DNA of 62,000 nucleotides from the NCBI GenBank assembly GCA_951406725.2, contig OX597824.1:32260001-32322000 (forward strand), written 5' to 3'. Below the pieces are notes generated by a model. That model saw nothing but the letters and a program-made list of their open reading frames with translations. It did not search any database and was not told the DNA's origin. Source of the stretch: Octopus vulgaris (lineage: Eukaryota). Position numbers and translations under genes: made by a program. Shown in pieces: positions 15,301 to 36,150 of this stretch. Numbering within the stretch: position 1 is the stretch's first letter; each line of letters opens with the position of its first letter.

Positions 15301-18300
15301 ATATTACAAAGTATTCACTATGTGCAACAGAAGCAGTGTTACTTTAGAACAGTAAGCTGTATGTCTGCAATATTTCTCGTGATATTACTATCTCACGACA
15401 AATACCACAGTTAATTAGGTTTTCCAACATATATCTGCATTAATATATGATACAGTTTGCTACTATATCATAATATTAACATTATACTTTTCAGGACCTG
15501 ACTTCACTTTATTATTCCTACCCTATTTAATAGCTACTAGCACTATGACCCGGCAACACCGTGTCATAGTGCTTAGTGCATGCATATACAGCTGCATGCG
15601 TGCGCACATACATGCGAGTACTGTCCAAATCTCCGAACAATCACATACAGCTAGCTGGCATTCAATTGACGTATCAAGTTTCAGGCATTTTGATTGGGTT
15701 TTGGATAGAAAATTCACAAAAAAGTCACTTCTAGTGAATTTTTTAATGGCTTTGTGGGGTGACTGGGGAAATGTAAAGATGTGCATGACCACCCTTGGAT
15801 GGTTTTGAATGACCATAGAAAGTGCAAGCCCTCTAACTGAAAAGTTGTGGATTTGTATAAAGGACACACACACAGACATTTTGCCGTTTATATATATAGA
15901 GATTTTCCCAAACTAGCACGTGAAGGAAGGCTTTTGTAGAATCATTTGAATTTTTTGACTGGATATTCTTTCTACAGCTAACCAGTTAAACTGTAATGGA
16001 GGTCAGCTAAAATGGAATAAGTTTGGTAGCTTTTCAGTAGTTAGTAGAAGGCGCGTGGCTCAGTGGTTAGAGCGTCGAGCTTACGATCGTGAGGTTGTGA
16101 GCTTGAATCCCGGACCGGGCTGCGTGTTGTGTTCTTGAGCAAGACACTTTATTTCACGTTGCTCCAGTTCACTCAGCTGTAGAAATGAGTTGTGACGTCA
16201 CTGGTGCCAAGCTGTATCGGCCCTTGCCTTTCCCTTGGATAACACTGGTGGCGTGGAGAGGGGAGGCCGGTATGCATGGACGACTGCTGGTCTTCCATAA
16301 AAAAAAAAAACAACCTTGCCCAGACTTGTGCCTCAGAAGGTAACTCTCTAGGTGCAAACCCATGGTCAGTGTCTGACCGAAGGGGGTCACAAGTAGTAGT
16401 AGTAGTAGCAAGATTTGAACATATGACTATACGGTCAATTATTCCAACACCAGGACCTCACAGCTCTTGTGCTTTAATGGAACAAACTCAGTTTATTTTT
16501 ATGCCAACATTTAAACAATGCATCTCTATCACACAATACATTGTCATCATTATCATTATTGTTCTAATGTCCATTTTTCCATGCTTGCATGGCTTGGATG
16601 GAATTTATCCAGGCAGATTTTCTATGTCTGGATGCCCTTCCTGTTGCCTATCCCAGGCAAGGGGGCAGTAACAAAGACACACGAACACAACAGGTTTCCA
16701 CACTTTCTCTCTACCGAATCCATTTACAAGGCTTTCACTGGTGAAGGGCTATAGTATAAGACATTTGTCCAATGTGCAACACAGGCAGACTGAACCCAAA
16801 ACCATATGGTTGGAAAGCAAACTTCTAATCATGTAGCGATAGTTTTCCAGCTTACCAGCTCCTGTCAAACCATCCAACATGGAAAATGGATGTTAAATCC
16901 AGCATGAAAGATGGATGTTAAATGATGAATATAATAATGTGTATTAAAGCATGTAATATAGGCCCAACTGCACATATAGGACTTAGGTTGATTTTTGAGA
17001 CATTTTTTTGGAAAACAAATGTGTCATATAAGCCATCAAATATACTCTTTACTTTTACTTGTTTCAGCCATTTGACTGTGGTCATGCTAGAGCATCGCCT
17101 TTAGTCGAGCAAATCGACCCCAGGACTTATTCTTTGTAAGCCTTGTACTTATTCTATGGTACCTACAAGGCCTGAAATTTCTTAATTCCAAGTTTTTTCA
17201 ATTCCATCATAGAACATAAAACACTACCTTTTGTTGGTTTATTATTTGGTAACAAAAACCTGGCCCCTGTTCCCTGCTCACATTCTCTAATCCCCCATCT
17301 CCTAGCATAAAGCCAACCCTCACCTTGCCTTGAGTATCACAGTCTCACAAGCAGCATGGTGACCTCACTAGTGCCGGTGCCATGTAAAAAGTACCAAGTA
17401 CATGCTGTAAAGTGGCTGGCATTAGGGAAGGCATCCAGCTGCAGCAACTGTTTCAAAGCAGACATAATGCAGTCTTTGGACCCAACAGATTCTGTTGCCG
17501 ATCAACCTATGCCTGCATGGATATTAAATGATAATGATGAGGATAAATAATAAATTAAAGGAAAGGGTGAATTGAGTAAACTTACTTCTTTTAGAGTGTC
17601 GAGTTTAAGAGAAGGATTACTGAGAACTGATTGAAAAGCTTCTTGTGAAGTTAAGAAGTTATAGAAACGCAGAGTATTTTGGGGTACATTTGCTTTCTGG
17701 GTCATTTGCTGCCATCTTTTACTGACTGGAAAACATTAAAACAAACAATGAAAAACAATTAGGATATTATTTAATTTCCATGAGAGTAAAAAATAAGTTT
17801 GGTTTAAGATGCTAGACAACAAATACAAAGAATTGCAATTTCAAATCCTGGTAGCTTTGTATAATATTTAATCCCTGATGAACCCAGAGCAAACAGACTT
17901 CTAGTCAAGGCATTTCAGTGTGATTATCGTAACTTATTTTCAGAGACAGCATATCTAGGACTACATAATCCAAAGTGCACATCCATTTTATTAGAGATTT
18001 TAGGAAGATTTGGCTGCTATTTCTAGCAATTTGAATTACCAAATAGCAGCTCTCTCATTGGCTTGACTAGTACTGTGTCTAATTGCTTCAGAGGCTCATT
18101 TTTACACCAGTATGTTTAAAGTAAAGTAAAACTTTCAGTTACAACAATCCAGACACAAAACTGAATTAAGAACAAACAACATTGATAAAAAAAAGTACAC
18201 TGACATAGTGCTGAAAGTTTAGTGTTACATGGTTAAACATTAAAATATTTGAGAAATGTCAATAACCTGCTGTAAATGGTGTACAACTGGCATAGGCACG

Positions 18301-21300: not shown

Positions 21301-24300
21301 AACCCGCCCTGGGTGAATGCCGTCACAAGTACAAGTAGGTAAGTATCCTATAATGTCAAAACAAGGGGACACAAACTCACAAAGACATATACATACACAC
21401 ACACAGAGGCTGCTTTCAGTTTCTGTCCAACCCATGCCAGCATGGAAAGTGGATGTTAAATGATGATAAAATCCACTCACAAGGACTTGGTCAGCCCAGG
21501 GCCATAGCAGAAGACACTTGTTCACAGTGTCAAGCAGTGGGACTGAACTTGAAACCATAAGGTTAGGAAGTAATCACACAGCTAAACCTGCACCTATATA
21601 AATATATATACACACAGACAGACAGAAAAGGTTCCCATAAAACATTGTTTTATGTTTATTTTAACTTGAAAAGGTTTATATTTTTTATTAATTGACATTT
21701 TTATTTTAAGTTCTATACGTAACTGTTTAATCACACCATGCACAAAGGAAGCCTTGGAACATATTCAAATAAATATATGTCTATATTGCAGAAAGGACTC
21801 CTTCCAATCTTCAGTAGTGAAATAAAAAAAAAAACTCTTTATTTATGGAAGATGGGGCTCCTTGTCACACAGCTAAAAGCTTCCATAGCCACGCCTGTAA
21901 CCAGATACGAACTCTACTGAACACCTCTGGGGCATAATGGACAAGACACTTATGCAAATGGAATGTCTACTAAATATTAGATATTGACATTATAATAATT
22001 AATAAATAATTTGAATGTATAATTTCAGAATGAAATAAATTTTAATGATTATAAGGGTGTCTATTTACTTGTCATGTCCTTGTGTGTGTGTCTGTGTGGA
22101 TATATATATATACGCACACACACATATATTCTCATTATTTTGCAATTATTAGCATCAAGCTAAACTAGAGAAGAGCAAATAGCTGGCATTTCAAACAAAC
22201 GTAACCAACACGGGAACTTTTAAGGGGAAACAATTATATAATGTATCATCTTATGTAAAGTTAGTAATCTGCTACAGTTGACGTTTGGTGCATTTGGTAC
22301 TATGCTGAATGCATATTCCTTGTTTGCTGATGGCCAATTTATCCATCACTGTGCTGTCAAGTTCACTCATTATTATAGTCATTCTCATGGTTCCTGATAT
22401 GCTCCAAAAAATGTCAGCTACAATAGTTACAATAAGACATCCTGCATAAAGTTCAATGAACTGTTATTAGTCAAAATAAAGTTCAATGAACTGCTATAGT
22501 TGGCATAAAGTTCAAGTAAATTTTGGGTCAATCTGTCTGAATATCCTCAGGAGAGTAACTAAGAATTAATTCTGTCTCATGGTGGAGAGGCAGACGTGGA
22601 AAAACAACATCCAACCAGAAAACATGCACATCAAAAAATTTTAGCTGACCCTTGACATAAGAAAATGTTACCCTACCAAAAAAAAAAACACTACAAAACC
22701 CTGCAATTATTTCATCCAGTCAGTATTAAAATTATTTAGTTGTAAAAAATATGTGGGGTTATTTTCAACAAAAAATCTATCTAAAGTATGATAACAGTAG
22801 TTCAGTGAATAATTAACTCTTAGCATTCAGATTACTCTGTCAAATGCAATGTTTATTTATTCTCATTATTTTTAATTAATCACGTGTAATTTTGGTACTT
22901 TGGGATTTTTTTCTGTAATTGTTTATTTTCAAAATGACATTGTAGGGTGGGTGTGAGAGGCTGACTACTTTGAACATAAAACAGGTAGAATATTTGGCCT
23001 GGACATAGCCAGTTTAAATGCAAAAGGGTTACTTTGAAGGAAAATATGCAGAGAAGAAAAACAACTTAATATAGACTATAACCATACCTGTCTATTTCAA
23101 TGGAATTGACATTTTTGTATTTAATATCACAAGAGAATTTGGATGCTGACTTGAAGTTTTCAAGAACCAACAGACTGGCTGTAAAAAAAACAAAAATGAA
23201 GAAGTATGTATATATATTCCTGACCAAAATATTATTTTCTGATTTCATACATAATTCTTGTAGATTTAGAAAAATGAGCAAATTGGAAAGACTTTTATGT
23301 GATCAGATCAAATGCAGAAGAAGAGAAATAGTTCCAAGGAATAGTGAACAAATTCTAAATGTGGAAGCAAAGCTTAAAATTGGAAGAGCTCAACGTAAAT
23401 TAAGCAAAATTGAAAATTTTAGTGAACAAGGAAGAAGTCAGGACTCTACTGCCATCTATGTTAAGCTAACATAAGAAATAAAATAAGAGTATGCAGGAAT
23501 TCCATTCAGGTACACAAGCTGTTTCAGCGAGATCCTCGGACTTTGTGTGAAGACACACAAGAATATGGAACGAGACAGTTGACAGCTGTTATTTGGATGC
23601 CAATGATTTGGCACAACTGACTGGACATTCAGCCAGTTTTGGTGCACAGAAATATACACAAAGACACAAAGAGAAAGAGAGATGGAGAGAGAACAACAGA
23701 AACATTAAAATGTATTCAAGAGTCGAGTAACTTGTAAGATTTGTAATATAAATGATATTAGGCATTCAAGCATAAATTTGAGTCAGAACAAACACTGCAG
23801 GTTCACTACTAGGGTTTAAACCATGTAGCTATCACTTATTGGGTTTCTGTATGACTTGTAACACAAAGAGTGCTTTTTCCTTGCACACTTTCATGAATTT
23901 ACCAACCCTGTCCAATCTTCTGTACTGCTTCTGTTATATTTACCTTTCTATACCTTATGGTTGTGAAAGGGAGGCGAGCTGACAGAAACATTAGCACATC
24001 GGGTGAAATGTGTAGCCGTATTTCGTCTGCCGTTACGTTCTGAGTTCAAATTCCGCCAAGGTCGACTTTGCCTTTCATCCTTTCGGGGTCGATAAATTAA
24101 GTACCAGTTACGCACTGGGGTCAATGTAATCAAGTTAATCCGTTTGTCTGTCCTTGTTTGTCCCCTTGTGGGTAGTAAAGAAATATATACCATATGGTTG
24201 TGAAAGCTGGACTCTTACAGCTGACATGCAGGTATGTCAGAATTCAGGTATTTGAGCACAAGTGCTTTCAGAGACAATTACACATGCTGTACACAGAACA

Positions 24301-27300
24301 AAATGAATAGCTTTGTCAGGCAGCCAATCAACAAATACACTGGCAAACAGGAATCACTCCTTGTGCAGATAAGACGAAAGCTTGTCTGGTACGGGCATGT
24401 ATCCTGTCATAATTCTCTGTCCAAAATCATTCTTCAGGGCACATTTGAGGGAGAGAAAAGAGAGGCAGGCAGAGAAAATCCTGGTTTGACAGCACCAAAG
24501 ACTGAATGGGTCACAACGCAGCAAATTTGCTATGCATGACAGAGAACAGTGACTAATGCTGACAATTGACTATAAAAGCGTCTAGAGTGACACCCCAGTA
24601 ACTGCCTGAATCAGTTAAGACAAAACAAAGTTTATAGTCATATAATTCTTTCTTTGCCATGGTGTCAGGTAAGATTAAAACCATTACGACCAATTATATT
24701 TTTTATCAAATAAGGCAATTAGTCTCCATCCTTCTTCAAACATCACAAGCACCTTGTCCTATCTCCTCTGGGAAACACCGTACAAGATGATATAGGGTTA
24801 GAGGGGATCTACAACACTTCTTTTTCATATATAAAGAAATATATAAGGTGCATTCCAGAAGTTTTGAGACTTTTTTTAGGAGAGTTATAACATCCTAGAT
24901 TACTGAAATTTTAGTATAACATTACTATACATATAAAGCTGACCTGCAACTTTTGTTAATCTAGATTAAAGGAGATAACATAATAGCACTTTGAATACAC
25001 CATAACTAAACACTGCTTGTCACAGCTGACTGGCTTGCAGATTGCAGTCGAGATATGAAAACAATTTGGAAGCTTGCAGCCATGCAATAAAGTTTTGTGT
25101 TAAACCAAGCAGAAACACTACAGGAACTTATGAAGTGCTCCAGATTGGTTTTAGATTAACTTATATGAGCTGAGCATGTGTTTTTCGCTAGCACAAGAGG
25201 CCAAAAAAGGCAAGTCCTCCAGAAAGCTCATGATGACCCTATTTTTCCACAGCAAGGGTACCATCTACATCTGGGTTCCCTTTGGCCAGATGGTCACCAA
25301 AAATTACTTTGTGGGGGGTTTGAAGAGATTTTGTTGCAAAACGCCAGAGCACCTGCACCAGATTACAATTCCAACTACTTTACAAAGATGAGCATCAAAA
25401 CTGCTTCTCACCTACCCTACAGTCTAGACCTTGCTCCCGGTGACTTTTGGTTGTTCTTCAAGCTGAAGGAGAATAAGGAGGAGGCTGTGACATGGGTCCC
25501 GGTCACCTTCACTTTGGAGTACTTCCACAGGGCCTTCACAAAGTTGCTGGAGTGCTAACAACAAGGGCATTGAACTCAGAGATCTTACTTTGACTCTTTA
25601 ACATTCAGATGCCTTTGCTGTCACAAAATAGGGTCATTGTGAGCTTTCTGGAGGACTTGCTTTGTTTGACCTCTTGTGCTAGTGAAAAACAGATGTCCAG
25701 CTTATACATGTTAATCTATAAGCAGTTTGGAGTATTTTGTAAGTTTCTTATTTCTTCATTACCCACAAGGGGCTAAACATAGAGGGGACAAACAAGGACA
25801 GACAAAGGGATTAAGTTGATTACATCGACCCCAGTGCTTAACTGGTACTTAATTTATCGATCATGAAAGGGTGAAAGGCAAAGTCGACCTCGGCGGAATT
25901 TGAACTCAGAACATAAAGACAGACGAAATACCATTAAGCATTTCGCCTGGCGTGCTAACGTTTCTGCCAGCTTCCCACCTTTTGTAAGTTTCTGTAGAGA
26001 TTCTGTCCCGCTTAACACAAAATTTTATTGTATCGCGAGCTTCCAAATTGTCTTCATGTCCCAAATGCATTCTGCAAACCAGTCACCTGTGACAAGCAGT
26101 GTTTAGTAAGTAATGCTTATTTATTCACACTATTTTGAGTTAATCATGTATTATCTTGTAGCTTTGAGATTTCAATGGTGTAACAGTATACTTTTACAAT
26201 GACATTGTCAGGTAAACATAGAGGGGACAAACAAGGACAGACAAAGGGATTAAGTCGATTACACACACACATTTGGATGTGTATGCTTGTTGTAATACCT
26301 CAAAAAAATAATACAGCTTTCATATAACTATGGCTATCCAATACGGGGTTGTTTAACTAAGTCAGCACTGATCCAGCAGTCCTAGTGTCAAGGGCGTTCC
26401 AGTCATGGCCATCGCATTTTAAGGTATAATTTATCAAGAATTAAACTTCTGAATATCCTGTTATTTTAAGGCGTTGTGAAATGAGATAAGCTTTTATTCC
26501 TAGCTGGTCGGGCGACCGCGTAGAAATCAAACCCAGTTAGTTTGATTTCGTTTTTAGCTAAAATTACCTTTGTTAATGAGCACAGGCGTTCTATCCATGA
26601 TCCTCACATTCTTTTTATTTATATCAAGAAATAAACAGTCGAATGTATTCTTAATTCTAGAATATAACAACTTTTTCGAACAAACCGAATGACCTAATTG
26701 ATTCGCGAGCTTCAAGTATTGATATTATTGCGTCAATATTTTGAAATTGCATCATACAAATTGCATCATACAAATTGACAATCAGAATCGATCAGTGTGA
26801 CAGTTAAATACTAACAAGAAAACCTATCGATTGACTAGTTAAAATCTATTTTAGCTCTCACAGATTTAGTTAATGCCAAATGAATAAGTTACTTCACCTT
26901 CAACGAGGGTGGATTCTAGCTTTCACGTATTCGCCAGACGGGCTAAAAAATAGACAGTCTGTCACTCCCAAAATTCACACCTTAATGTTTGCAAAAAGGT
27001 CACATTGGATACTGTAGTCACAGACAGGGCCCTCTCAACAACAGAAAGGACCCCCTACATACATAACCATTGGGCCCTTAAACTTACAGAGATCTCGGGT
27101 AAGTGTGCTGTGTACCTATGCCTCCTGAAAATCTAGGTGTGATGGCTATGATCGGAATGTCTCAATCAATGCCTACTTGAGTCTAAAATGCAACAATTAA
27201 TACTTTAGGAATTTAACTATATATTGATATAATTCAGCGACACATTAAGGTACGAAATGTAGTTAACCATAGAAATCGGAAAAAAAAAAAATTTGGAATA

Positions 27301-28393
27301 AAATAAAGTAACGAGGAATGAGGGTTTATTTTGAAATTGAACCCAGGAATAACATAAGAATTAGAAAGAGTGGGGAAAAAATTACTTGTGCAGTAAACTG
27401 TTATAACAAGTAAATACTGAAGAAAATAATTTAAAATATTGATATATTACGTTAGAAATACATATATCTAAATATTGCAAATATTTCCCTGGTTTACGCT
27501 AACATCAAGGCTGGTACTATCAGAAACTCGGCGACGACTTGCACACGTGTTTTATGTGTACGCAAGCATATTTATAGCTCAAAAGAGAATTTCCTGATGA
27601 AAGTATGAGAACATTTCACAAGTTTATGATTGCATCATCATCATGGAAAGAGAAGCGGAAGATAAAAAAAAAAGTAACTTCATAAGAAATAAGAACAAAA
27701 CAAAATTGAAAAAAAAAAAAAAACACCCGATGTATTCTATATTTAAAATTAACACGTATATAATAGAAACAGACATATATAGCTGTGTGTACAAATGTTC
27801 TACACTGACATATCCGAAAGAATTAAAAATCATCGCATTACAATAAGCATACACATCCAAACGTGTGTGTGTGTACGTATATGTGTATTATAACTTCTGC
27901 ATTTACATTATTTTGAAATAAAGAAACTGAAAAATAAATATTCTGGTTATATCGTCTATTCCTTAAAATAGTTATAGGAGAGACTTAAAAGGCTGAGATG
28001 ATGCAGAATAACTGGCGACTTTAATTGTTTAAATCATGACTAACTTTATATAATTATACCAGTAACGCACTGGGGTCGATGTAATCGATTTAATCCCTTT
28101 GTCTGTCCTTGTTTGTCCCCTCTATGTTTAGCCCCTTGTGGGTAATAAAGAAATATATTATTATTATTATTAAATATTAGGAAATACTTTAAGGTAAGAT
28201 CAGAAAGACTATTTTCTGATGTTAAATTATAAATAAACTACATGATTCATTTCAAACTCTAGGTAGTTTCGGTGATTGGTGGGGGGTCATAGGGAAGTGA
28301 GAAAGAGTATATTATTGTTGGAAATAGTAATGATAAAGTATGCTTACCGACAGCAGCATTTTGTGAGTCGATATTGAGTTTGAGAGGAGCCAT
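246..28393 (-). CDS. EPRS1: Bifunctional glutamyl-prolyl-tRNA synthetase, 5' part (15 coding exons, about 577 codons; gene runs off the left edge)
   Basis: Hand-spliced exons give a continuous frame: [22 protein letters not shown]...[37 protein letters not shown]...RFDDTNP...TSDHF...MRDPTLYRC...[27 protein letters not shown]...[10 protein letters not shown]...[16 protein letters not shown]...TFINWGN. All introns GT-AG. The ProRS half is outside the window, so the EPRS fusion is inferred from the metazoan norm. Confidence 0.97.
991..1101 (-). CDS. EPRS1: EPRS exon 14 (111 nt, [12 protein letters not shown]...EVAKHPK)
   Basis: Conserved VIDP..PRY and HPK motifs; cag acceptor, AAG|gt donor. Confidence 0.96.
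1691..1750 (-). CDS. EPRS1: EPRS exon 13 (60 nt, [20 protein letters not shown])
   Basis: Conserved MEWDKIWA motif; tag acceptor, AAG|gtaat donor. Confidence 0.97.
1955..2504 (+). mobile_element. Internally deleted Tc1/mariner DNA transposon
   Basis: About 27-bp TIRs (ttgattgaaaagtaactcccta / tagggagttacttttcaatca) in TA context; transposase remnant [10 protein letters not shown]...[15 protein letters not shown]. Confidence 0.9.
2735..3045 (+). mobile_element. RTE-clade LINE 3' fragment
   Basis: [41 protein letters not shown]...[15 protein letters not shown] is typical of the RTE/BovB C-terminus. Confidence 0.88.
3505..3855 (+). mobile_element. SINE-like repeat family D (catcatcat...ccatgctggcatggg...gatgcccttcctaa), with 42-bp tandem repeat x about 2.8 at 3725-3852
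   Basis: Homologous copies at about 480-800, 4435-4640, 6420-6630, 6920-7230, 9280-9420, 12245-12590, 13825-14095, 16550-16925, 17340-17545. Confidence 0.8.
3960..4044 (-). CDS. EPRS1: EPRS exon 12 (85 nt, [29 protein letters not shown])
   Basis: Conserved motif; tag acceptor, gtaagt donor. Confidence 0.98.
4162..4434 (+). mobile_element. Tc1-type MITE with long TIRs, right end interrupted by a SINE
   Basis: TA-CAGGGTG start; 4178-4253 is the reverse complement of 4361-4434; internal [17 protein letters not shown] resembles a Tc1 transposase C-terminus. Confidence 0.85.
4862..5246 (+). mobile_element. Non-autonomous Helitron (old)
   Basis: A|TCTATAAAG start; hairpin cccgagcgaggcacggg at 5217-5233 followed by TTAG|T (CTAG variant). 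Confidence 0.6.
5417..5525 (-). CDS. EPRS1: EPRS exon 11 (109 nt, [37 protein letters not shown])
   Basis: KMSKS-equivalent LSKRK loop; tag acceptor, gtaagt donor. Confidence 0.98.
7281..7478. repeat. Degenerate inverted repeat (old MITE-like element)
   Basis: ttatttaacttattggttaaacagtcagt pairs with actgactgtttagcaccaagttaaacaa. Confidence 0.55.
7506..7630 (-). CDS. EPRS1: EPRS exon 10 (125 nt, [42 protein letters not shown])
   Basis: Near-invariant GluRS/GlnRS block; cag acceptor, gtaag donor. Confidence 0.98.
9911..10305 (-). mobile_element. Gypsy-type gag N-terminal fragment flanked by 47-bp direct repeats
   Basis: ATG at 10220: [15 protein letters not shown](SLFTADP)[22 protein letters not shown]...frameshift...[40 protein letters not shown]. 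Confidence 0.75.
10337..10508 (-). CDS. EPRS1: EPRS exon 9 (172 nt, [12 protein letters not shown]...CCVRAKIDM...MRDPTLYRC...TGDKYK)
   Basis: Conserved motifs; a second in-frame acceptor lies at 10502. Confidence 0.96.
11051..11265. mobile_element. TTAA-flanked piggyBac-like MITE (right end truncated)
   Basis: ttaacctttagcattcag start; same family as 18642, 22813 and 60915. Confidence 0.75.
11322..11728 (+). mobile_element. tRNA-derived SINE family B (Meta-like central domain), tandem dimer
   Basis: Head ggcaagctggcagaaacgttagc...gttcaaattcc, then gactttgcctttcatcctttcggggtcgataaa; about 188-bp body repeated. Confidence 0.88.
11987..12179 (-). CDS. EPRS1: EPRS exon 8 (193 nt, [10 protein letters not shown]...TSDHF...AYVDDT...RRNQ)
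   Basis: Conserved GluRS motifs; cag acceptor, gtaagt donor. Confidence 0.98.
12245..12590 (+). mobile_element. SINE family D copy, inverted relative to 13825-14095
   Basis: 12410-12586 is the reverse complement of about 13828-13999. Confidence 0.85.
13460..13586 (-). CDS. EPRS1: EPRS exon 7 (127 nt, [13 protein letters not shown]...RFDDTNP...FEQ; HIGH motif as HVGH)
   Basis: Class I HIGH signature and RFDDTNP; cag acceptor, CAG|gtaac donor. Confidence 0.98.
13825..14095 (-). mobile_element. SINE family D copy
   Basis: catcatcatcgtttagcgtccgctttccatgctagcatgggttggacg... Confidence 0.85.
14100..14396. repeat. Palindromic element, about 108-bp arms (about 93% complementary) around an 80-bp spacer
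   Basis: tgttgtatttggggatgg...cgtatttc (14100-14207) versus gaaatacg...ccatccccaaatacaaca (14289-14396). Confidence 0.9.
14207..14250 (-). ncRNA. Minimal type I hammerhead-ribozyme-like motif (degenerate)
   Basis: Minus strand: gacca-CTGATGA-g-GTCACA-gaag-TGTGAC-GAAA-g-aa-cTC-tgact. Core and stem II are clear; stems I and III are weak. Confidence 0.45.
15092..15177 (-). CDS. EPRS1: EPRS exon 6 (86 nt, [29 protein letters not shown])
   Basis: Conserved Glu[10 protein letters not shown] motif; cag acceptor, gtaagg donor. Confidence 0.97.
15537..15900 (-). mobile_element. Non-autonomous Helitron
   Basis: Minus strand begins TCTATATATATAAACGG and ends with hairpin gcactatgac...gtcatagtgc and CTAG|T. 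Confidence 0.85.
16050..16390 (+). mobile_element. tRNA-derived SINE family C (ggcgcgtggctcagtggttag...cttgagcaagacact)
   Basis: A/B-box tRNA-like head running into a shared body; further copies at about 7770-8010, 8080-8420, 18980-19260, 39555-39860, 44870-45100, 46430-46730, 50610-50870, 54040-54340. Confidence 0.85.
17586..17725 (-). CDS. EPRS1: EPRS exon 5 (140 nt, [11 protein letters not shown]...[17 protein letters not shown]...LKE)
   Basis: Open frame, phases 1 to 0 fit neighbours, gtaagt donor. Confidence 0.92.
18405..18558 (-). CDS. EPRS1: EPRS exon 4 (154 nt, IDFWIDFAQ...[20 protein letters not shown])
   Basis: GST-C-like YLVG..LTLAD motif; tag acceptor, gtaagt donor. Confidence 0.95.
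18642..18868. mobile_element. TTAA-type piggyBac-like MITE
   Basis: TIRs accctttagcatt / aatgctaaagggt, about 225 bp. Confidence 0.8.
19600..19965 (-). mobile_element. tRNA-derived SINE family A (ggagtggctgtgtggtaag...gggcaagtgtcttct...microsatellite...cagtcaaatgactgaaac)
   Basis: Further copies at about 3155-3487, 5655-6020, 8625-9020, 38848-39345, 45520-45905, 47485-47870, 50003-50470. Confidence 0.85.
20245..20341 (-). CDS. EPRS1: EPRS exon 3 (97 nt, [32 protein letters not shown])
   Basis: GST-like domain RYL..LYG motif; cag acceptor, GAG|gtaaaa donor. Confidence 0.93.
21760..22090 (+). mobile_element. Tc1-like transposase remnant
   Basis: [12 protein letters not shown]...[13 protein letters not shown] resembles the DDE motifs QDNAP.H and SPDLNPIEHLW. 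Confidence 0.7.
22813..23031. mobile_element. TTAA-type piggyBac-like MITE
   Basis: ttaactcttagcatt...aatgcaaaagggtta. Confidence 0.8.
23088..23178 (-). CDS. EPRS1: EPRS exon 2 (91 nt, [31 protein letters not shown])
   Basis: ttttttttacag acceptor, AG|gtatgg donor, phase 1 to 2. Confidence 0.9.
23270..23680 (+). mobile_element. Highly decayed R4/Dong-like LINE C-terminal remnant
   Basis: With a frameshift it reads ETVD~QLLFGCQ*FGTTDWT, resembling the CCHC knuckle ETIxHLLSGCxxLAxTEY of RLE LINEs. Confidence 0.4.
23945..24560 (+). mobile_element. RTE LINE fragment interrupted by SINE B (23970-24185)
   Basis: [13 protein letters not shown]...[24 protein letters not shown]; 21-bp TSD tatacc(t/a)tatggttgtgaaag at 23949 and 24186. 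Confidence 0.85.
24843..25600 (+). mobile_element. Decayed mariner element
   Basis: [11 protein letters not shown] start, [23 protein letters not shown], and [21 protein letters not shown] (YSPDLAP motif). Confidence 0.85.
26727..26768 (-). promoter_or_regulatory. Cluster of three C/EBP-ATF (CARE/AARE, ATF4-type) elements in EPRS intron 1
   Basis: ATTGCGTCA 26727-26735, ATTGCATCA 26746-26754 and 26760-26768 (TGATGCAAT on the minus strand). Confidence 0.55.
27629..27637 (-). promoter_or_regulatory. Single CARE consensus (TGATGCAAT) in EPRS intron 1
   Basis: ATTGCATCA about 720 bp downstream of exon 1. Confidence 0.4.
28348..28393 (-). CDS. EPRS1: EPRS exon 1 coding part (46 nt, [15 protein letters not shown]+G)
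   Basis: accATGG start context, G|GTAAGC donor, phase 1 matches exon 2, resembles EPRS N-termini. Confidence 0.88.
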
Positions 28394-28541
28394 GGTCAAA
28401 GACGACACTAAGCAACAGTCCGCTACAAAGGGTGAAAGGAATAATGCTGGCAGAAAAGGGAGGTAAATCTTGAGTAAGGGAAGACAACTACGGCAGTGCG
28501 ATTCAGTAATATTCTGCGTGATGGTGGTGGTGGGGTTCTGT

Positions 28542-28868
28542 GTGAGGGCGCGTGGCTTAGTGGTTAGGGCATTCGGCTCATGATCGTAAGGTTGTGAGTT
28601 CGATTCCCGGCGACGCTTTGTGTCCTTGAGCAAGACACTTTATTTCACGTTGCTCCAGTCCACTCAGCTGGCAAAAATGAGTTGTACTTGTATTTCAAAG
28701 GGTCAGCCTTGTCACTCTCTGTGTCACGCTGATTATCCCCGAGAATTACGTTAAGGGTACACGTGTCTGTGGAATGCTCAGCCATTTGCACGTTAATTTC
28801 ACGAGCAAGCTGTTCCGTTGATCGTATCAGCTGGGACCCTCGTCGTCGTAACCGGCGGAGTCTTTAAA
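28542..28868 (+). mobile_element. SINE family C, full length, in the EPRS proximal promoter
   Basis: Perfect 13-bp TSD ggtggggttctgt at 28529-28541 and 28869-28881. Confidence 0.9.
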
Positions 28869-32069: not shown

Positions 32070-32824
32070 TCTATATATATAAAAGTGAAGTTGTGTGAGT
32101 GTCTGTCTCCTACGATTTAGATTCCTAATTACTCCCACATTTTGCGGTGCAGTTTAACCAAATTCGGGTATCTTATAGTCGTGATTCATATCGAGCCCTT
32201 CTGGGTATTAGCGCGCGTCTACGATGAGTCTACGATTTTAAAAATAATTTACCATAATTTTTTTCCATTTTAACGCATATTTTTTCAGTGTCGATGGCGA
32301 CGGAGTTGGCGTCCATGCTCACACCTGCACCTGTGTTACTTCTCCCCCTTCTTACCTCCCTCGTGAAGCTGTGGGGAAGGGAGTGTAAGGAAATCAACGT
32401 CGTAAAGCGTTGTCAAGGAGACCAGCGTTCTTTTAGAACAACGACTTCATGGCTTGAAGACACCAAAACAGAAACGGCTAAGAAAGCCCGAAAGCAAATT
32501 CTACAAAATCGGGAAACACGCCACACAGAGAAGGTTTCCCGTGCAAATAATTTGCACAACCGAATGTTATAGTTGTTGCACAACTTTTACTTAAAAAATA
32601 TTATCCAAACACAAACTTTTGAAGGCAATATTGTATGGCGATGGTACTTGTAAAATATGGTAATGGATTTAGTAGCCAAAAGGAGAGAGCAGAGGCATAG
32701 TATGGTGGTGGTGGAGGCGGTGGTAGTGGCAGCGGTGGTGGCGGTGGTGCTGGTAGTGGTGATGGTGGTCGTGGTCGTGGTGGTCGTCGTGTTTGTGGTG
32801 GTGGTGGTGGTGGTGGTGGTGTTG

Positions 32825-32856
<32 letters not shown>

Positions 32857-33756
32857 GGTGGTGGTGGGAGTAGTGATGATGGTGGTGGTGGTGGTCGTGG
32901 TGATGATGGTGGTGGTGGTGGTGGTTGTGGTGGTCTTCGTGATGGTGGTGGTGATGGTCATGGGCGTAGTGGTGGTGGTGGTCATGGTGGTAGTGGTGAT
33001 GGTGTTGGTCGTGGTGGTGGTGGTGGTGGTGGCTGAAGCTGTCGTCTGGGTTCTTCCAATTTTTTCGTGTGTCGGTGGCGGCGTTGGCGTTCATGCTCGC
33101 ACCTGCACCTGTGTAGCTCCTCCCCTTCTTCCCTCCCTCGTGAAGCTGTGGGGAAGGCAGGGTAGGGAAATCAACGTCGTAAAGCGTTGTCAAGGAGACC
33201 AGCGTTCTTTTAGAACAACGACTTCATGGCTTGAAGTCGCCAAAACAGAAATCGCTAAAAAAGCTGAAACAGATCCACAAAAACGGCAAAAACCGCCACA
33301 CAGGGCAGGTTTCCTGTGCAAACAATTTGCACAACCGAATGTTTTAGTTGTTGCACAAATCTTTATATATAAAAGTGAAGTTGTGTGTCTGTCTCCTACG
33401 ATTTAGATTCCTAACTACTCCTACATTTTGCGGTGCAGTTTAACCAAAACCGGGTATCTTATAGTCGTGATTCATATCGAGCCCTTCTGGGTATTAGCAC
33501 GCGTCTACGATGAGTCTACGATTTAAAAAAAAATTTACCATCATTTTTTCCATTTTAATGCATTTTTTCGCTATTATATAAGGGAAGTAACTCTCTAAAA
33601 ATGTCTACGATGAGTCAACGATTAAAAAAAAAATTACCATAATTTTTTATTCCATTTTTAATGCATTTTTTTGCTATTTTTTTGCTATAACTCTCTAAAA
33701 ATGCTTATATTGTTATTTCCCTTACAAACACGAGCAACGCCAGGCGATACTGCTAG
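32070..33756 (+). mobile_element. Composite non-autonomous Helitron (two TC starts, internal duplication, GTG-type microsatellite)
   Basis: A|TCTATATATATAAAAGTGAAG at 32070 and again at about 33360; hairpin cgagcaacgccaggcg and CTAG at 33753-33756. Confidence 0.85.
32700..33035. repeat. Imperfect (GTG/GTT/ATG)n trinucleotide microsatellite
   Basis: Source of the poly-Val, poly-Thr and poly-His pseudo-ORFs. Confidence 0.95.
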
Positions 33757-34534: not shown

Positions 34535-35408
34535 TTGGTACAGAACAAGTTCTTATTCATTTCAGTCGTAGATGACTGCCCAAGATGCAATTTACCATGT
34601 ACATTGCGCGAAAATACAAACATCTTCCGATGTGGAAGGACTGTTCGCCGTCGAAGGCAAAGGCCAACGCAATGTGGATATTCAATATCCCTATACAGCA
34701 ACACATTTTTGGAGCGGAGTCAGCTACCACCCTGTAAAATCTTGTTATTTGTGAATTACTTCCTTACAGACTGTTGGTCGCACGCATTAGACGTGGAAAA
34801 TTTGAACATTTCGTATCCGACCTCAATTGATTGGCGATCCTTCTGCTCCGAGGTTTGTCAGCATTGGGTAGAGAATTACCAGGACCAAATCGGTGGACCA
34901 GGAGTTGAAGTGGAGATCGATGAAACAGTTACTGTAAGGAGAAAATACAATCGCGGAAGACTCACAAAAACTATCTGGCTTTTCGGTGGGATAGAGCGAA
35001 TAGGCAAAAAAAAAGTTTTGATACCTCTTTCATCTGAGTGTGGTGAAGAGGAAAGGCGAGATGCCGCCACGCTGATCCCCTTAATTACCCGATATATACG
35101 CCAAGGGTCGGTAGTATATAGCGATTCTTGGGCTGCATATAACTCTCTTGGAAATCTCGGGTATACCCACTTCCGCATCAACCACAGTGAAAACATTTGT
35201 GGATCCGACAAACGCGTCGGTGCACACACAGACGATAGAGAGATTGTGGGGGTCAGTGAAGAGATCGGTTGTTCGCCCAGACATTCGTGCCTGTTACTTA
35301 AAACAATACCTCGCGAAGTTCCTTTTTATGGACAGCATTAAACCTGCTGCCAAGAGAATACACGTATTCTTATTGGCAGCAGCAAGTCTTTATCCTGGCC
35401 CGAGATAA
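34535..35408 (+). mobile_element. Merlin (IS1016/ISXO2-like) transposase with one frameshift
   Basis: CPRC..C zinc knuckle, GGPGVEVEIDET, RKYNRGR, WLFGGIER, VYSDSWAAY; after an extra A at about 35195 the frame continues FVDP..VHTQTIERLWGSVK...YLKQYLAKFLF. Confidence 0.92.
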
Positions 35409-35669: not shown

Positions 35670-36150
35670 TACTCGTTTAGAACAAGTAGTTTTACACCAA
35701 TTACACTATTTTTTCTTAGTTTAAAGGTCGTGGACTGAAGATGGGAAATTTCCGAAGCCTCTCTCCCACCCCCTTTCGCGAGCGCGCATTTTTTTTTATC
35801 ATATTCGTTTAGAGCGAGTTGTTTTACACCTATTACGCTGTTTTTGTTTTTGTTTTTGTGCCCGGTTCAGACGCTTTCGGAAATTCCCGATATAAATATT
35901 CCGAGGCCTCTCCCCCACCCCTCTTTCGCGAGTGCGCATTTTTTTGTCATATTCGTTTAGAGCAAGTTGTTTTACACATATTACACTATTTCTTTTTTGT
36001 TTTGGTGCCCGGGTCAGCCCCTCAGACGCTTTCGGAAATACCCGATGTGAATTTTCCGAGGCCTCTCCCCCCCCCCCTTTCGCGTGCGGGCATTTTTTTT
36101 TCATATTCGTTCATAGGAAGTTGTTTTACACCTATTACACACATTTTTTT
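35670..36150. repeat. About 150-bp tandem repeat x about 3.2 downstream of Merlin
   Basis: ttccgaggcctctcccc...tttcgcg...catattcgttt...gttgttttacac recurs at about 35750, 35899, 36054. Confidence 0.85.

What the first reader, a model, noticed from the sequence alone, without database searches (positions are those of the whole stretch)
26727..27637. ATF4-type amino-acid-response elements clustered in EPRS intron 1
Seen: three exact TGATGCAAT (two as a 14-bp tandem duplication, one at 27629) plus a TGACGCAAT variant, next to TCGCGA in a CpG-retaining, repeat-poor patch. My rough hand estimate is about 0.07 exact 9-mers expected in this 5.2-kb intron. Established: mammalian aminoacyl-tRNA synthetase genes are ATF4 targets through CARE sites, some located downstream of the TSS. 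Inference: the integrated-stress-response wiring of tRNA synthetases may be conserved, or convergently amplified, in cephalopods.
Basis: partly seen in the sequence, partly recalled or inferred. Interest (0 to 1): 0.7.

Follow-up and report, generated by a model that had tools for sequence, protein, structure and literature searches.

The report
Conserved CARE-like site, octopus EPRS intron
The first intron of the octopus Glu/Pro-tRNA synthetase gene carries several copies of the DNA motif that the stress factor ATF4 uses in mammals; one copy is conserved in a distant octopod next to a 28-nt invariant block, so it is probably a real regulatory element of a known kind, but nothing here shows that ATF4 binds it or that it works.

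Summary
The window is Octopus vulgaris chromosome OX597824.1, and EPRS runs on the minus strand. Intron 1 is 5,169 bp. All three TGATGCAAT and the one TGACGCAAT in the 62 kb lie within 911 bp of it, on the sense strand.

They are not three independent events. The 14-bp tandem copy is O. vulgaris-specific slippage: O. sinensis has one 9-mer plus the variant, and O. bimaculoides has one 9-mer.

The informative result is the comparison with Argonauta hians (a different family), where the intron is otherwise unalignable. The proximal site survives as an invariant 12-mer, GATGATGCAATC, inside a 30-nt alignment (2 of 500 shuffles do as well). It is collinear with a 28-29-nt perfectly conserved, single-copy block that contains a CACGTG E-box.

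No RNA-gene signal was found. Chiton, limpet and Aplysia EPRS loci lack the strict motif near the start. Squid, cuttlefish and other octopus aaRS genes could not be fetched.

The "CpG-retaining patch" is the tail of a CpG-undepleted 5' domain that also covers the promoter and all the upstream DNA in the window, not an island.

Verdict: a plausible promoter-proximal intronic CARE-type enhancer. It closely parallels the mammalian SARS intron-1 CARE and is a new member of a known kind. ATF4 binding and stress response are untested.

The parts
28394..28533 (-). Core promoter / 5'UTR of EPRS
   Evidence: 85-95% identical to O. bimaculoides, with identity collapsing upstream of about 28533. The stretch 28492-28339 aligns to Argonauta at 65% identity.
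28348..28393 (-). EPRS coding exon 1 ([15 protein letters not shown] + 1 nt), followed by a GTAAGC donor
   Evidence: Sequence reading. It matches the N-terminus of the annotated O. vulgaris protein P0001.
23179..28347 (-). EPRS intron 1 (5,169 bp)
   Evidence: Donor at 28347 and acceptor AG at 23180-23179. Exon 2 maps to the annotated models.
27629..27637 (-). Proximal CARE-type 9-mer TGATGCAAT, 756 nt downstream of the ATG
   Evidence: It is present at the orthologous place in O. sinensis, O. bimaculoides and Argonauta.
27610..27639 (-). Block A: 30-nt element GATGATGCAATCATAAACTTGTGAAATGTT around the proximal site. The 12-mer GATGATGCAATC is invariant in four octopods.
   Evidence: Local alignment to the collinear Argonauta interval: 2 of 500 shuffles score as well. 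Four-species alignment. Single copy in each Octopus locus; Argonauta has a second copy of the 11-mer core at L002:16912.
27541..27569 (-). Block B: ATGCTTGCGTACACATAAAACACGTGTGC. 29 nt are identical between Octopus and Argonauta, and 28 nt are invariant in four species. It contains a CACGTG E-box.
   Evidence: It is single-copy in every octopod locus and absent from chiton, limpet and Aplysia. It is the only shared exact block of 14 nt or more between the two introns.
26746..26773 (-). Distal pair of TGATGCAAT sites, made by a 14-bp tandem duplication (+ strand ATTGCATCATACAA, twice)
   Evidence: The duplication is absent from O. sinensis and O. bimaculoides.
26727..26735 (-). TGACGCAAT variant site
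   Evidence: It is present in O. sinensis. In O. bimaculoides a 19-bp indel merges it with the neighbouring site into a single TGATGCAAT.
26703..26708 (.). TCGCGA palindrome next to the distal cluster
   Evidence: It is invariant in the three Octopus species. There are 8 copies in the window, and no evidence that it is special.
27088..27165 (-). Segment homologous to the alternative first coding exon ('exon 1b') of O. bimaculoides isoform X1. The GTAAGT donor is conserved; the ATG and reading frame are not.
   Evidence: P0122 maps to L003:11212-11289, inside intron 1. Alignment.
26300..28540 (.). CpG-undepleted 5' domain of the gene (o/e about 0.75-0.9). It ends near 26300, where the CpG-depleted gene body (0.32-0.35) begins.
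   Evidence: The same layout is seen in O. bimaculoides and Argonauta.

Best explanation
The 5' 2 kb of EPRS intron 1 is a promoter-proximal cis-regulatory region.

Its core is a module conserved across octopods. It consists of a composite bZIP site of the C/EBP-ATF (CARE) type, GATGATGCAATC at 27628-27639, and about 60 nt downstream a 28-nt invariant block containing a CACGTG E-box (27541-27568). A second site about 870 nt further into the intron is shared by the three Octopus species. It has been multiplied by replication slippage, from 1 copy to 2 to 3, with O. vulgaris carrying the most.

Proposed mechanism (inferred, not shown). When uncharged tRNA or other stress activates an eIF2-alpha kinase, ATF4 translation rises. 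ATF4 paired with a C/EBP-family partner then binds the CARE(s) in this unmethylated 5' domain and raises EPRS transcription from the canonical promoter. This is what happens at the mammalian SARS intron-1 CARE. The E-box block would add input from a bHLH-ZIP factor.

Shown here: motif identity, position, single-copy orthology, conservation against an otherwise unalignable intron, and the slippage history.

Inferred: which protein binds, and any stress response.
For: 1. All strict motifs in 62 kb (81 kb in L001) lie 756-1,666 nt downstream of the EPRS ATG.
2. Proximal-site conservation in Argonauta. Only the promoter with exon 1, block A and block B align between the two species, and they are collinear. 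Block A aligns with 2 of 500 shuffles scoring as well, and its 12-mer is invariant in four species. Block B is 28 nt invariant and single-copy.
3. Four of the 9 shared non-low-complexity 12-mer blocks between the two introns contain the CARE core.
4. All sites carry the extended ATGATGCAAT.
5. The precedent matches in sequence, gene class and position. The functional human/mouse SARS CARE is TGATGCAAT in intron 1, about 1 kb from the TSS; 16 of 20 cytosolic aaRS genes use CAREs; Eprs is responsive (PMC5175342).
6. An invertebrate precedent exists: clustered, functional ATF4 sites in the first intron of Drosophila 4E-BP (PMC5223598).
7. Chop and Atf4 motifs are reported enriched in Euprymna ATAC-seq peaks (PMC9023564). 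ApCREB2 is the Aplysia ATF4 homologue and belongs to a bZIP network with ApC/EBP (PMC2546398).
8. The sites lie in the CpG-undepleted, repeat-free 5' domain.
9. No RNA-gene alternative is supported.
Against: 1. There is no binding, accessibility or expression data.
2. With the 9-mer masked, the block A flanks alone do not align significantly. The conservation signal is therefore short, about 12 + 6 + a few nt.
3. The O. vulgaris cluster on its own is only marginal once slippage and look-elsewhere effects are allowed for.
4. The distal cluster is an indel hotspot, is not alignable to Argonauta, and within-genus identity is uninformative.
5. The strict motif is absent near the EPRS start in chiton, limpet and Aplysia. 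The relaxed motif is only weakly enriched, and the limpet count is inflated by a repeat.
6. Decapods and other octopus aaRS genes are untested.
7. The proximal 9-mer abuts an (ATG)n run, which raises its chance probability.
8. The octopus ATF4 and C/EBP DNA-binding specificities were not examined.
Confidence: 0.42

Rival explanations
1. Chance plus slippage. The 9-mers have no function as CAREs. The distal copies are neutral products of replication slippage in an AT-rich intron. The proximal copy arose beside an (ATG)n microsatellite. Its survival in Argonauta reflects either luck or constraint on a larger element (with block B) that has nothing to do with bZIP binding.
For: - 9 of 100 shuffles reach 3 or more copies in the window.
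- There are two independent places, not four.
- The distal region is an indel hotspot and does not align to Argonauta.
- The block A flanks alone are not significant.
- Post-hoc motif choice brings the estimate to about 0.02-0.06.
- Outgroups lack the strict motif.
Against: - The exact 12-mer sits at the collinear place in a different family whose intron is otherwise saturated.
- Argonauta has a second sense-strand copy in the same intron, sharing GTATGATGCAAT and ATGATGCAATCAT with the Octopus sites.
- Every Octopus species keeps at least one perfect distal 9-mer despite two indels.
- Gene class and position match the known mammalian arrangement.
Confidence: 0.28
2. A real bZIP site, but not an integrated-stress-response element. 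It would be bound by C/EBP homodimers, a PAR/ApAF-like factor, or another ATF/CREB-family dimer. It would serve constitutive, growth-related or neuronal-activity-related expression of a housekeeping translation gene, together with the E-box block (for example Myc/Max-, USF- or TFE-type input).
For: - TGATGCAAT is a composite of a C/EBP half-site and an ATF half-site, so several dimers could use it.
- Molluscan C/EBP, ApAF and ApCREB2 form several alternative dimers (PMC2546398).
- The adjacent invariant CACGTG suggests growth-type input.
- Euprymna Chop/Atf4 motif enrichment was reported in a module associated with nervous tissue, not in a stress context (PMC9023564).
Against: The exact 10-mer ATGATGCAAT is the preferred ATF4/CHOP-type sequence in vertebrates, and aaRS genes are a canonical ATF4 class. 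Nothing here discriminates between possible partners.
Confidence: 0.15
3. Internal alternative promoter. The patch drives transcripts that start inside intron 1 (exon 1b) and skip the canonical start codon. Blocks A and B would be upstream promoter elements of that start site, and the distal sites would lie just downstream of it.
For: - O. bimaculoides RefSeq isoform X1 begins with a first coding exon inside intron 1, at +1,211 to +1,288. That is about 390-460 nt downstream of blocks A and B and about 350 nt upstream of the distal site.
- Its GTAAGT donor is conserved in all three Octopus species.
- The region is CpG-undepleted and repeat-free.
- In mammals the transcription machinery assembles at the intronic SARS CARE.
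Against: - The exon 1b ATG lies in a 15-nt insertion unique to O. bimaculoides, and a 7-nt indel breaks the frame in O. vulgaris and O. sinensis.
- No exon 1b homologue was detected in Argonauta.
- This is a single computational gene model.
- For mammalian SARS, 5' RACE was used to ask whether the intronic CARE is an alternative promoter, and the authors conclude that mRNA-producing transcription starts at the canonical TSS.
- This reading is not exclusive of the best explanation.
Confidence: 0.1
4. An intron-encoded small RNA (C/D-box snoRNA or miRNA). ATGATGA would be a C box, and block B would be a guide or mature arm.
For: The octopus sense strand reads ccATGATGATGATGCAAT ... GTTTCTGATAG, with C-box-like and D-box-like motifs about 125 nt apart. 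Block B is perfectly conserved with sharp edges.
Against: - No Rfam match in the intron, even at E up to 10.
- Fold stability is ordinary in both species (z = -0.80 and -0.77), and the predicted folds differ.
- The spacing between blocks A and B is about 60 nt in Octopus but about 300 nt in Argonauta.
- Argonauta has ATGATGC, not ATGATGA, and has no CTGA after block B.
- There is no terminal stem.
Confidence: 0.03

Closest known systems
Intronic CARE of the mammalian seryl-tRNA synthetase gene (SARS/Sars), Shan et al. 2016, PMC5175342
   Same: Identical 9-mer (TGATGCAAT). Same gene class (cytosolic aaRS). Same place: intron 1, about 0.8-1.7 kb from the start here versus about 1 kb from the TSS there. 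Mammalian Eprs is itself Atf4/Chop-responsive.
   Different: For the mammalian element, Atf4 and Chop occupancy was shown and its enhancer activity was tested with site-mutated reporters. None of this has been tested here. The octopus gene has several sites plus an adjacent conserved E-box block. Homology between the octopus and mammalian elements is not claimed: outgroup molluscs lack the strict motif, so independent origin is at least as likely as descent.
Clustered ATF4 sites in the first intron of Drosophila 4E-BP (Thor), Kang et al. 2017, PMC5223598
   Same: An invertebrate case with several predicted ATF4 sites clustered in a first intron, acting as a stress-responsive enhancer.
   Different: A different target gene. 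The Drosophila sites were validated by mutation and atf4 knock-down, and the octopus sites were not.
Classical amino-acid response elements (CHOP/DDIT3 AARE, ASNS NSRE-1, SNAT2 intronic AARE) - recalled from general knowledge, not checked here
   Same: The same composite C/EBP-ATF half-site architecture. Some of these elements are intronic.
   Different: Those are single elements in vertebrate genes, with a defined second element in ASNS. No such second element was looked for here.
Cephalopod conserved non-coding elements and Atf4/Chop motif enrichment in Euprymna ATAC-seq peaks (Schmidbaur et al. 2022, PMC9023564)
   Same: The vertebrate-type Atf4/Chop motif appears enriched in cephalopod accessible chromatin. 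Short conserved non-coding blocks exist between cephalopod genomes.
   Different: That study's elements were at least 100 bp long at 95% identity and were tied to microsynteny and neural expression. The blocks here are 12-30 nt and sit in a housekeeping gene.

Membership tests
[quoted passage not shown] | Sequence matches 5'-TGATGxAAx-3' (the definition used by Shan et al. 2016) | tested here: met
   Three exact TGATGCAAT sites, identical to the human SARS CARE. The TGACGCAAT variant does not fit the strict pattern. One further relaxed site, TGATGAAAG, lies at 27595.
[quoted passage not shown] | Lies within about 3 kb of the start of a gene belonging to the ATF4-target class | tested here: met
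   The sites are 756-1,666 nt downstream of the EPRS ATG, in intron 1. Cytosolic aaRS genes, Eprs included, are Atf4 targets in mammals. The octopus TSS itself is not mapped.
[quoted passage not shown] | The site is under purifying selection (conserved where neutral sequence is not) | tested here: inconclusive
   Proximal site: conserved between Octopus and Argonauta, with 2 of 500 shuffles scoring as well and an invariant 12-mer. Distal sites: conserved only within the genus, which is uninformative, and not alignable to Argonauta. The strict motif is absent in chiton, limpet and Aplysia. Decapods could not be obtained.
[quoted passage not shown] | Occupied by ATF4 with a C/EBP-family partner | not testable with these tools
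   Needs ChIP, CUT&Tag, DAP-seq or EMSA with octopus proteins.
[quoted passage not shown] | Confers induction by amino-acid limitation or eIF2-alpha kinase activation, and this is lost when the site is mutated | not testable with these tools
   Needs reporter or expression experiments.
[quoted passage not shown] | The organism has ATF4 and C/EBP orthologues with conserved DNA-contact regions | not tested
   Literature only: ApCREB2 is the Aplysia ATF4 homologue and ApC/EBP exists (PMC2546398). The octopus proteins were not retrieved.
[quoted passage not shown] | Family-wide pattern: the other cytosolic aaRS genes of the same genome also carry such sites near their starts | not testable with these tools
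   No route to the other octopus aaRS loci. The look-up needs the exact protein sequence, and searches with non-cephalopod queries would not have ranked octopus proteins among the listed hits.
Intronic C/D-box snoRNA | Conserved C box (RUGAUGA) and D box (CUGA) 60-150 nt apart with a terminal stem, or a match to a known family | tested here: not met
   No Rfam match. The D box and the exact C box are not kept in Argonauta, and the spacing is 60 versus 300 nt. Fold z-scores are about -0.8.
Alternative promoter / alternative first exon | Transcripts with capped 5' ends starting in the region, and a first exon with a conserved donor | tested here: inconclusive
   One O. bimaculoides RefSeq isoform has a first coding exon here. 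The donor is conserved in Octopus, but the ORF is not. No transcript data were available.

The most novel reading that the evidence does not exclude
The octopod-conserved pair (CARE-type 12-mer plus the 28-nt invariant E-box block) is the control region of a stress-inducible internal promoter in EPRS intron 1. Under amino-acid stress it would produce transcripts that start at exon 1b and encode an EPRS lacking, or replacing, the extreme N-terminus of its GST-like domain. In this reading the ISR would change which EPRS isoform is made, not only how much, and the slippage-driven growth of sites in the O. vulgaris lineage would be tuning that switch.
Probability: 0.07. Interest if true: 0.6.

Novelty: new member of a known kind. 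Interest (0 to 1): 0.36.

Why it matters
If the proximal site is a working CARE, it would extend the ATF4-to-aaRS feedback loop to a lophotrochozoan. That loop is documented in mammals, and intronic ATF4 enhancers are known in Drosophila. The octopus arrangement (same 9-mer, same intron, similar distance) is strikingly like mammalian SARS. Because outgroup molluscs lack the strict motif, it would more likely show convergent re-use of the same solution than deep conservation.

It also gives cephalopod biologists a concrete, short candidate ISR reporter element that can be tested by mutation, in animals where few regulatory elements have been characterised.

The 28-nt invariant block beside it is a separate, unexplained conserved non-coding element that deserves its own look.

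If the site turns out not to work, the case becomes a useful caution. It would show how slippage and post-hoc motif recognition can mimic a transcription-factor site cluster.

Tried and rejected
1. snoRNA or miRNA reading of the conserved island. Rejected: no Rfam match, ordinary fold energies with different predicted folds, boxes not conserved, and 60 versus 300 nt spacing.

2. Dispersed-repeat origin of blocks A and B. Rejected: block B is single-copy per locus. Block A's 11-mer core is single-copy in the Octopus loci, with a second copy in Argonauta. Both are absent from the outgroups. There are no in-window repeat hits in 26297-27836.

3. Within-Octopus conservation as evidence of constraint. 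Rejected as uninformative. I first read the A-B island as about 95% versus about 82% identity, but the profile shows 90-97% in most ungapped windows. The lower average comes from indels.

4. Homology of the distal cluster with the second Argonauta 9-mer. Not demonstrable, although they share GTATGATGCAAT and both lie near the CpG transition.

5. Decapod or nautilus comparison. A second protein search with the N-terminal 575 residues found no further cephalopod models.

6. More lophotrochozoan loci. Look-ups for Ostrea, Mytilus and Lingula returned nothing, and Owenia's gene range was too long for DNA.

7. Limpet relaxed-motif excess. Discounted, because four of the hits are copies of one repeated element.

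8. Block B in JGI metagenome contigs. No match.

9. EGLN/PHD-like neighbour upstream of EPRS, as in chiton and limpet. Not found in the window; only low-complexity tblastx hits.

10. Shan et al. Supplementary Table S2 (the mouse Eprs CARE position). Not held in the library.

11. Method caveat. A human EPRS1 sequence recalled from memory served only to locate exons and to pad the query length. Scoring used the window-encoded part, and identity was verified with Pfam and the database names. My exon-3 acceptor was placed too far upstream compared with the annotated model. This does not affect intron 1.

12. The Argonauta coordinates printed carry an offset bug of +10,046. Corrected, they are 10923, 16910 and 16912, which agrees.
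Full report
**1. What is there**

The window is identical over 7.6 kb to Octopus vulgaris chromosome OX597824.1. A rough tblastn probe (human EPRS1 recalled from memory, used as a lead only) placed 13 exons on the minus strand, from about 20,358 down to 245. Reading the sense strand gave the first two exons:
- The ATG is at 28,393.
- Exon 1 ends at 28,348, followed by GTAAGC.
- Exon 2 starts at 23,178, after a polypyrimidine tract and AG.

The spliced N-terminal 586 residues hit Pfam tRNA-synt_1c at E 1e-116. They are 98% identical to the annotated O. vulgaris Glu/Pro-tRNA ligase. The shortfall comes from my exon-3 acceptor.

**2. The observation**

TGATGCAAT occurs at 26,746, 26,760 and 27,629, and TGACGCAAT at 26,727. 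All are on the minus (sense) strand, and these are the only copies in 62 kb.

However, 9 of 100 shuffles reach three copies window-wide, so the count alone is not remarkable. The clustering is what stands out.

A look-elsewhere control found about seven non-tandem loci where a 9-mer has all of its three or more copies within 911 nt, out of 38,410 distinct 9-mers.

The two neighbouring copies are one 14-bp tandem duplication, and the third copy abuts an (ATG)n run. There are thus two independent places.

The patch has no in-window repeat copies between 26,297 and 27,836. Its CpG o/e is 0.91, against 0.32-0.35 in the rest of the gene. But the promoter (0.75) and all 33 kb upstream (0.86-0.98) are equally undepleted. 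So the patch is the tail of a CpG-undepleted 5' domain that ends near 26,300, not an island. My reading, from general knowledge of invertebrate gene-body methylation, is that this domain is germline-unmethylated.

**3. Related sequences**

The protein search returned octopod orthologues, and their genomic loci were fetched:
- O. vulgaris (L001, the same locus as the window)
- Argonauta hians (L002)
- O. bimaculoides (L003)
- O. sinensis (L004)

Octopus and Argonauta are incirrate octopods of different families.

*3a. Within Octopus, the distal cluster has a clear history.*
- O. bimaculoides has one TGATGCAAT.
- O. sinensis has TGATGCAAT plus TGACGCAAT. It differs from O. bimaculoides by a 19-bp indel flanked by GCAAT.
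- O. vulgaris adds the 14-bp duplication.

Copy number therefore goes from 1 to 2 to 3 by slippage-type events, and every species keeps at least one perfect 9-mer. The polarity of the 19-bp event cannot be set without an outgroup.

Within-genus identity is about 90-97% in most ungapped 40-nt windows of this intron. Conservation among the three Octopus species is therefore not evidence of constraint. I withdrew an earlier impression that the island stood out.

*3b. Against Argonauta, the intron is essentially unalignable.* Only three things align, and they are collinear:
- the promoter with exon 1 (65% identity over 156 nt)
- block A
- block B

Block A is GATGATGCAATC[AT/CC]AAACTT[G/A]T.AA..GTT. 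Restricted to the collinear interval, 2 of 500 dinucleotide-context-preserving shuffles score as well. The 12-mer GATGATGCAATC is invariant in all four species. With the 9-mer masked, the flanks alone are not significant. The signal is real but short.

Block B, ATGCTTGCGTACACATAAAACACGTGTGC, is 29 nt identical between Octopus and Argonauta, with 28 nt invariant in four species. It is the only shared exact block of 14 nt or more. It is single-copy per locus and absent from the outgroups. It contains a CACGTG E-box.

The gap between blocks A and B is about 60 nt in Octopus and about 300 nt in Argonauta, where low-complexity sequence is inserted.

Argonauta has a second sense-strand TGATGCAAT deeper in intron 1, at +6,912. 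It shares GTATGATGCAAT with the Octopus distal sites and ATGATGCAATCAT with the Octopus proximal site. No alignment beyond that is significant.

Curiously, both this site and the Octopus distal cluster lie close to the point where CpG depletion sets in. That point is about +6.5-7 kb in Argonauta and about +2.1 kb in O. vulgaris. With two lineages, this is only a lead.

*3c. Outgroups.* The chiton (L005), limpet (L006) and Aplysia (L007) EPRS loci have no strict 9-mer between -1.5 and +3 kb. The relaxed TGATGNAAN form is nominally enriched there in Octopus, chiton and limpet (p about 0.02-0.04, uncorrected). It is not enriched in Argonauta or Aplysia. Four of the limpet hits are copies of one repeat.

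No squid, cuttlefish or nautilus gene model exists in the searchable collection, and several other look-ups failed. The claim therefore stands for octopods, not for cephalopods or molluscs.

**4. Rival readings tested**

*Small RNA.* The octopus sense strand has C-box-like and D-box-like motifs around the island. But Rfam finds nothing in the intron at E up to 10. The only hit in the searched stretch is a tRNA-like SINE upstream of the promoter. Fold energies are ordinary (z = -0.80 and -0.77) and the folds differ. The boxes and the spacing are not conserved in Argonauta. Rejected.

*Alternative promoter.* O. bimaculoides RefSeq isoform X1 starts with a first coding exon inside intron 1 (L003:11212-11289, +1,211 to +1,288), between the proximal module and the distal site. 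Its GTAAGT donor is conserved in all three Octopus species. But its ATG sits in a 15-nt insertion unique to O. bimaculoides, and a 7-nt indel breaks the frame elsewhere. So it is not a conserved coding exon. It does hint that transcription can initiate in this patch. That fits the mammalian observation that the transcription machinery assembles at the intronic SARS CARE, although there the mRNA still starts at the canonical TSS.

**5. Comparison with what is known**

Shan et al. 2016 (PMC5175342) report the following:
- 16 of 20 cytosolic aaRS genes are Atf4-induced through CAREs, defined as 5'-TGATGxAAx-3' within 3 kb of the TSS.
- Eprs is among the responsive genes.
- The functional SARS CARE is exactly TGATGCAAT, in intron 1 about 1 kb from the TSS.

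Kang et al. 2017 (PMC5223598) show four clustered, functional ATF4 sites in the first intron of Drosophila 4E-BP. Schmidbaur et al. 2022 (PMC9023564) report Chop and Atf4 motif enrichment in Euprymna ATAC-seq peaks. ApCREB2 is the Aplysia ATF4 homologue, within a bZIP network that includes ApC/EBP (PMC2546398).

A literature search for ATF4 together with octopus or cephalopod returned no paper describing a CARE in a cephalopod aaRS gene among the listed titles.

**6. Verdict**

The best-supported reading is a promoter-proximal intronic regulatory module of EPRS. Its octopod-conserved core is a CARE-type bZIP site plus an E-box-containing invariant block. A second, lineage-specific site has been multiplied by slippage in the O. 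vulgaris lineage.

That ATF4 is the factor, and that the element responds to amino-acid stress, is inference from motif identity, gene class and position. My confidence is about 0.4. The main rival is chance plus slippage, at about 0.3.

It is a new member of a known kind. Independent origin relative to the mammalian elements is at least as likely as deep conservation, given the outgroups.

Noticed in passing
window 27541-27569 (minus strand); L002:10923-10951; L003:10821-10840 and L004:10834-10853 hold its 20-nt core: A 29-nt stretch (ATGCTTGCGTACACATAAAACACGTGTGC) is perfectly identical between Octopus and Argonauta in an otherwise unalignable intron, and 28 nt are invariant in four species. 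It has sharp edges, is single-copy and contains CACGTG. It also begins a tiny ORF (ATG CTT GCG TAC ACA TAA). Its function is unknown, and it is more strongly conserved than the CARE itself.
   Followed up: partly
window ~26300 (boundary); L003 ~12750; L002 ~16500-17250: There is a sharp switch from CpG-undepleted sequence (o/e about 0.8-1.0: all the upstream DNA in the window, the promoter and the first ~2 kb of intron 1) to a strongly CpG-depleted gene body (0.32-0.35). The same layout occurs in O. bimaculoides and Argonauta. The distal 9-mers of Octopus and the second 9-mer of Argonauta both sit close to this boundary.
   Followed up: partly
L003:11212-11289 (O. bimaculoides); homologous window segment ~27088-27165, minus strand: RefSeq isoform X1 of O. 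bimaculoides EPRS (XP_052827810.1) uses an alternative first coding exon inside intron 1 (MIKDIPAIAITSRFSGGMSTLTRDLS). The donor is conserved in O. vulgaris and O. sinensis, but the ATG and reading frame are not.
   Followed up: partly
window 28536-28861 (tRNA-like core 28547-28618): A tRNA-derived SINE copy (Rfam tRNA, 28.3 bits, just under the gathering score) lies immediately upstream of the conserved EPRS promoter. It has 8 or more related copies in the window. It is shared with O. sinensis but not at this place in O. bimaculoides, so the insertion post-dates that split and marks the upstream limit of the conserved promoter.
   Followed up: partly
window 23959-26296 (3' half of intron 1): In contrast to the patch, this half of the intron is packed with dispersed repeats, with up to 20-22 in-window copies. 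I did not identify their families; the two ORFs scanned there had no Pfam hit.
   Followed up: partly
window 34535-35341, plus strand: A 268-aa ORF carries a DDE_Tnp_IS1595 (ISXO2-like transposase) domain (Pfam E 7.5e-10). It is probably a remnant of a eukaryotic IS1595-type DNA transposon in the DNA upstream of EPRS.
   Followed up: partly
window 32587-33406: A long low-complexity tract produces mirror-image 130-250-aa ORFs that are rich in Thr, Val or His depending on the frame. It coincides with the strongest GC-skew excursion in the window. Almost certainly non-coding.
   Followed up: no
window 3734-3860 and 35673-36123: Two tandem arrays turned up in the 9-mer clustering control: a ~42-bp unit repeated three times inside an EPRS intron, and a ~132-154-bp unit repeated three to four times upstream of the gene.
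   Followed up: no
L005:1-2364 and L006:1-4264 (upstream of EPRS, opposite strand): In both chiton and limpet, EPRS has a divergently oriented neighbour with zf-MYND + 2OG-FeII_Oxy domains (EGLN/PHD-like). This microsynteny is conserved between the two classes. No such gene was detectable in the 33 kb upstream of octopus EPRS in the window.
   Followed up: partly
window 28440-28492, minus strand; L002:9902-9960: The 5'UTR/promoter stretch conserved between Octopus and Argonauta includes CGYAGTTGTCTKCCCTTA and a pyrimidine-rich run (CTCCCTTTTCTGCC in Octopus, CTCCCCTTTCTGTC in Argonauta). This is reminiscent of a TOP-like start region. The TSS is not mapped.
   Followed up: no
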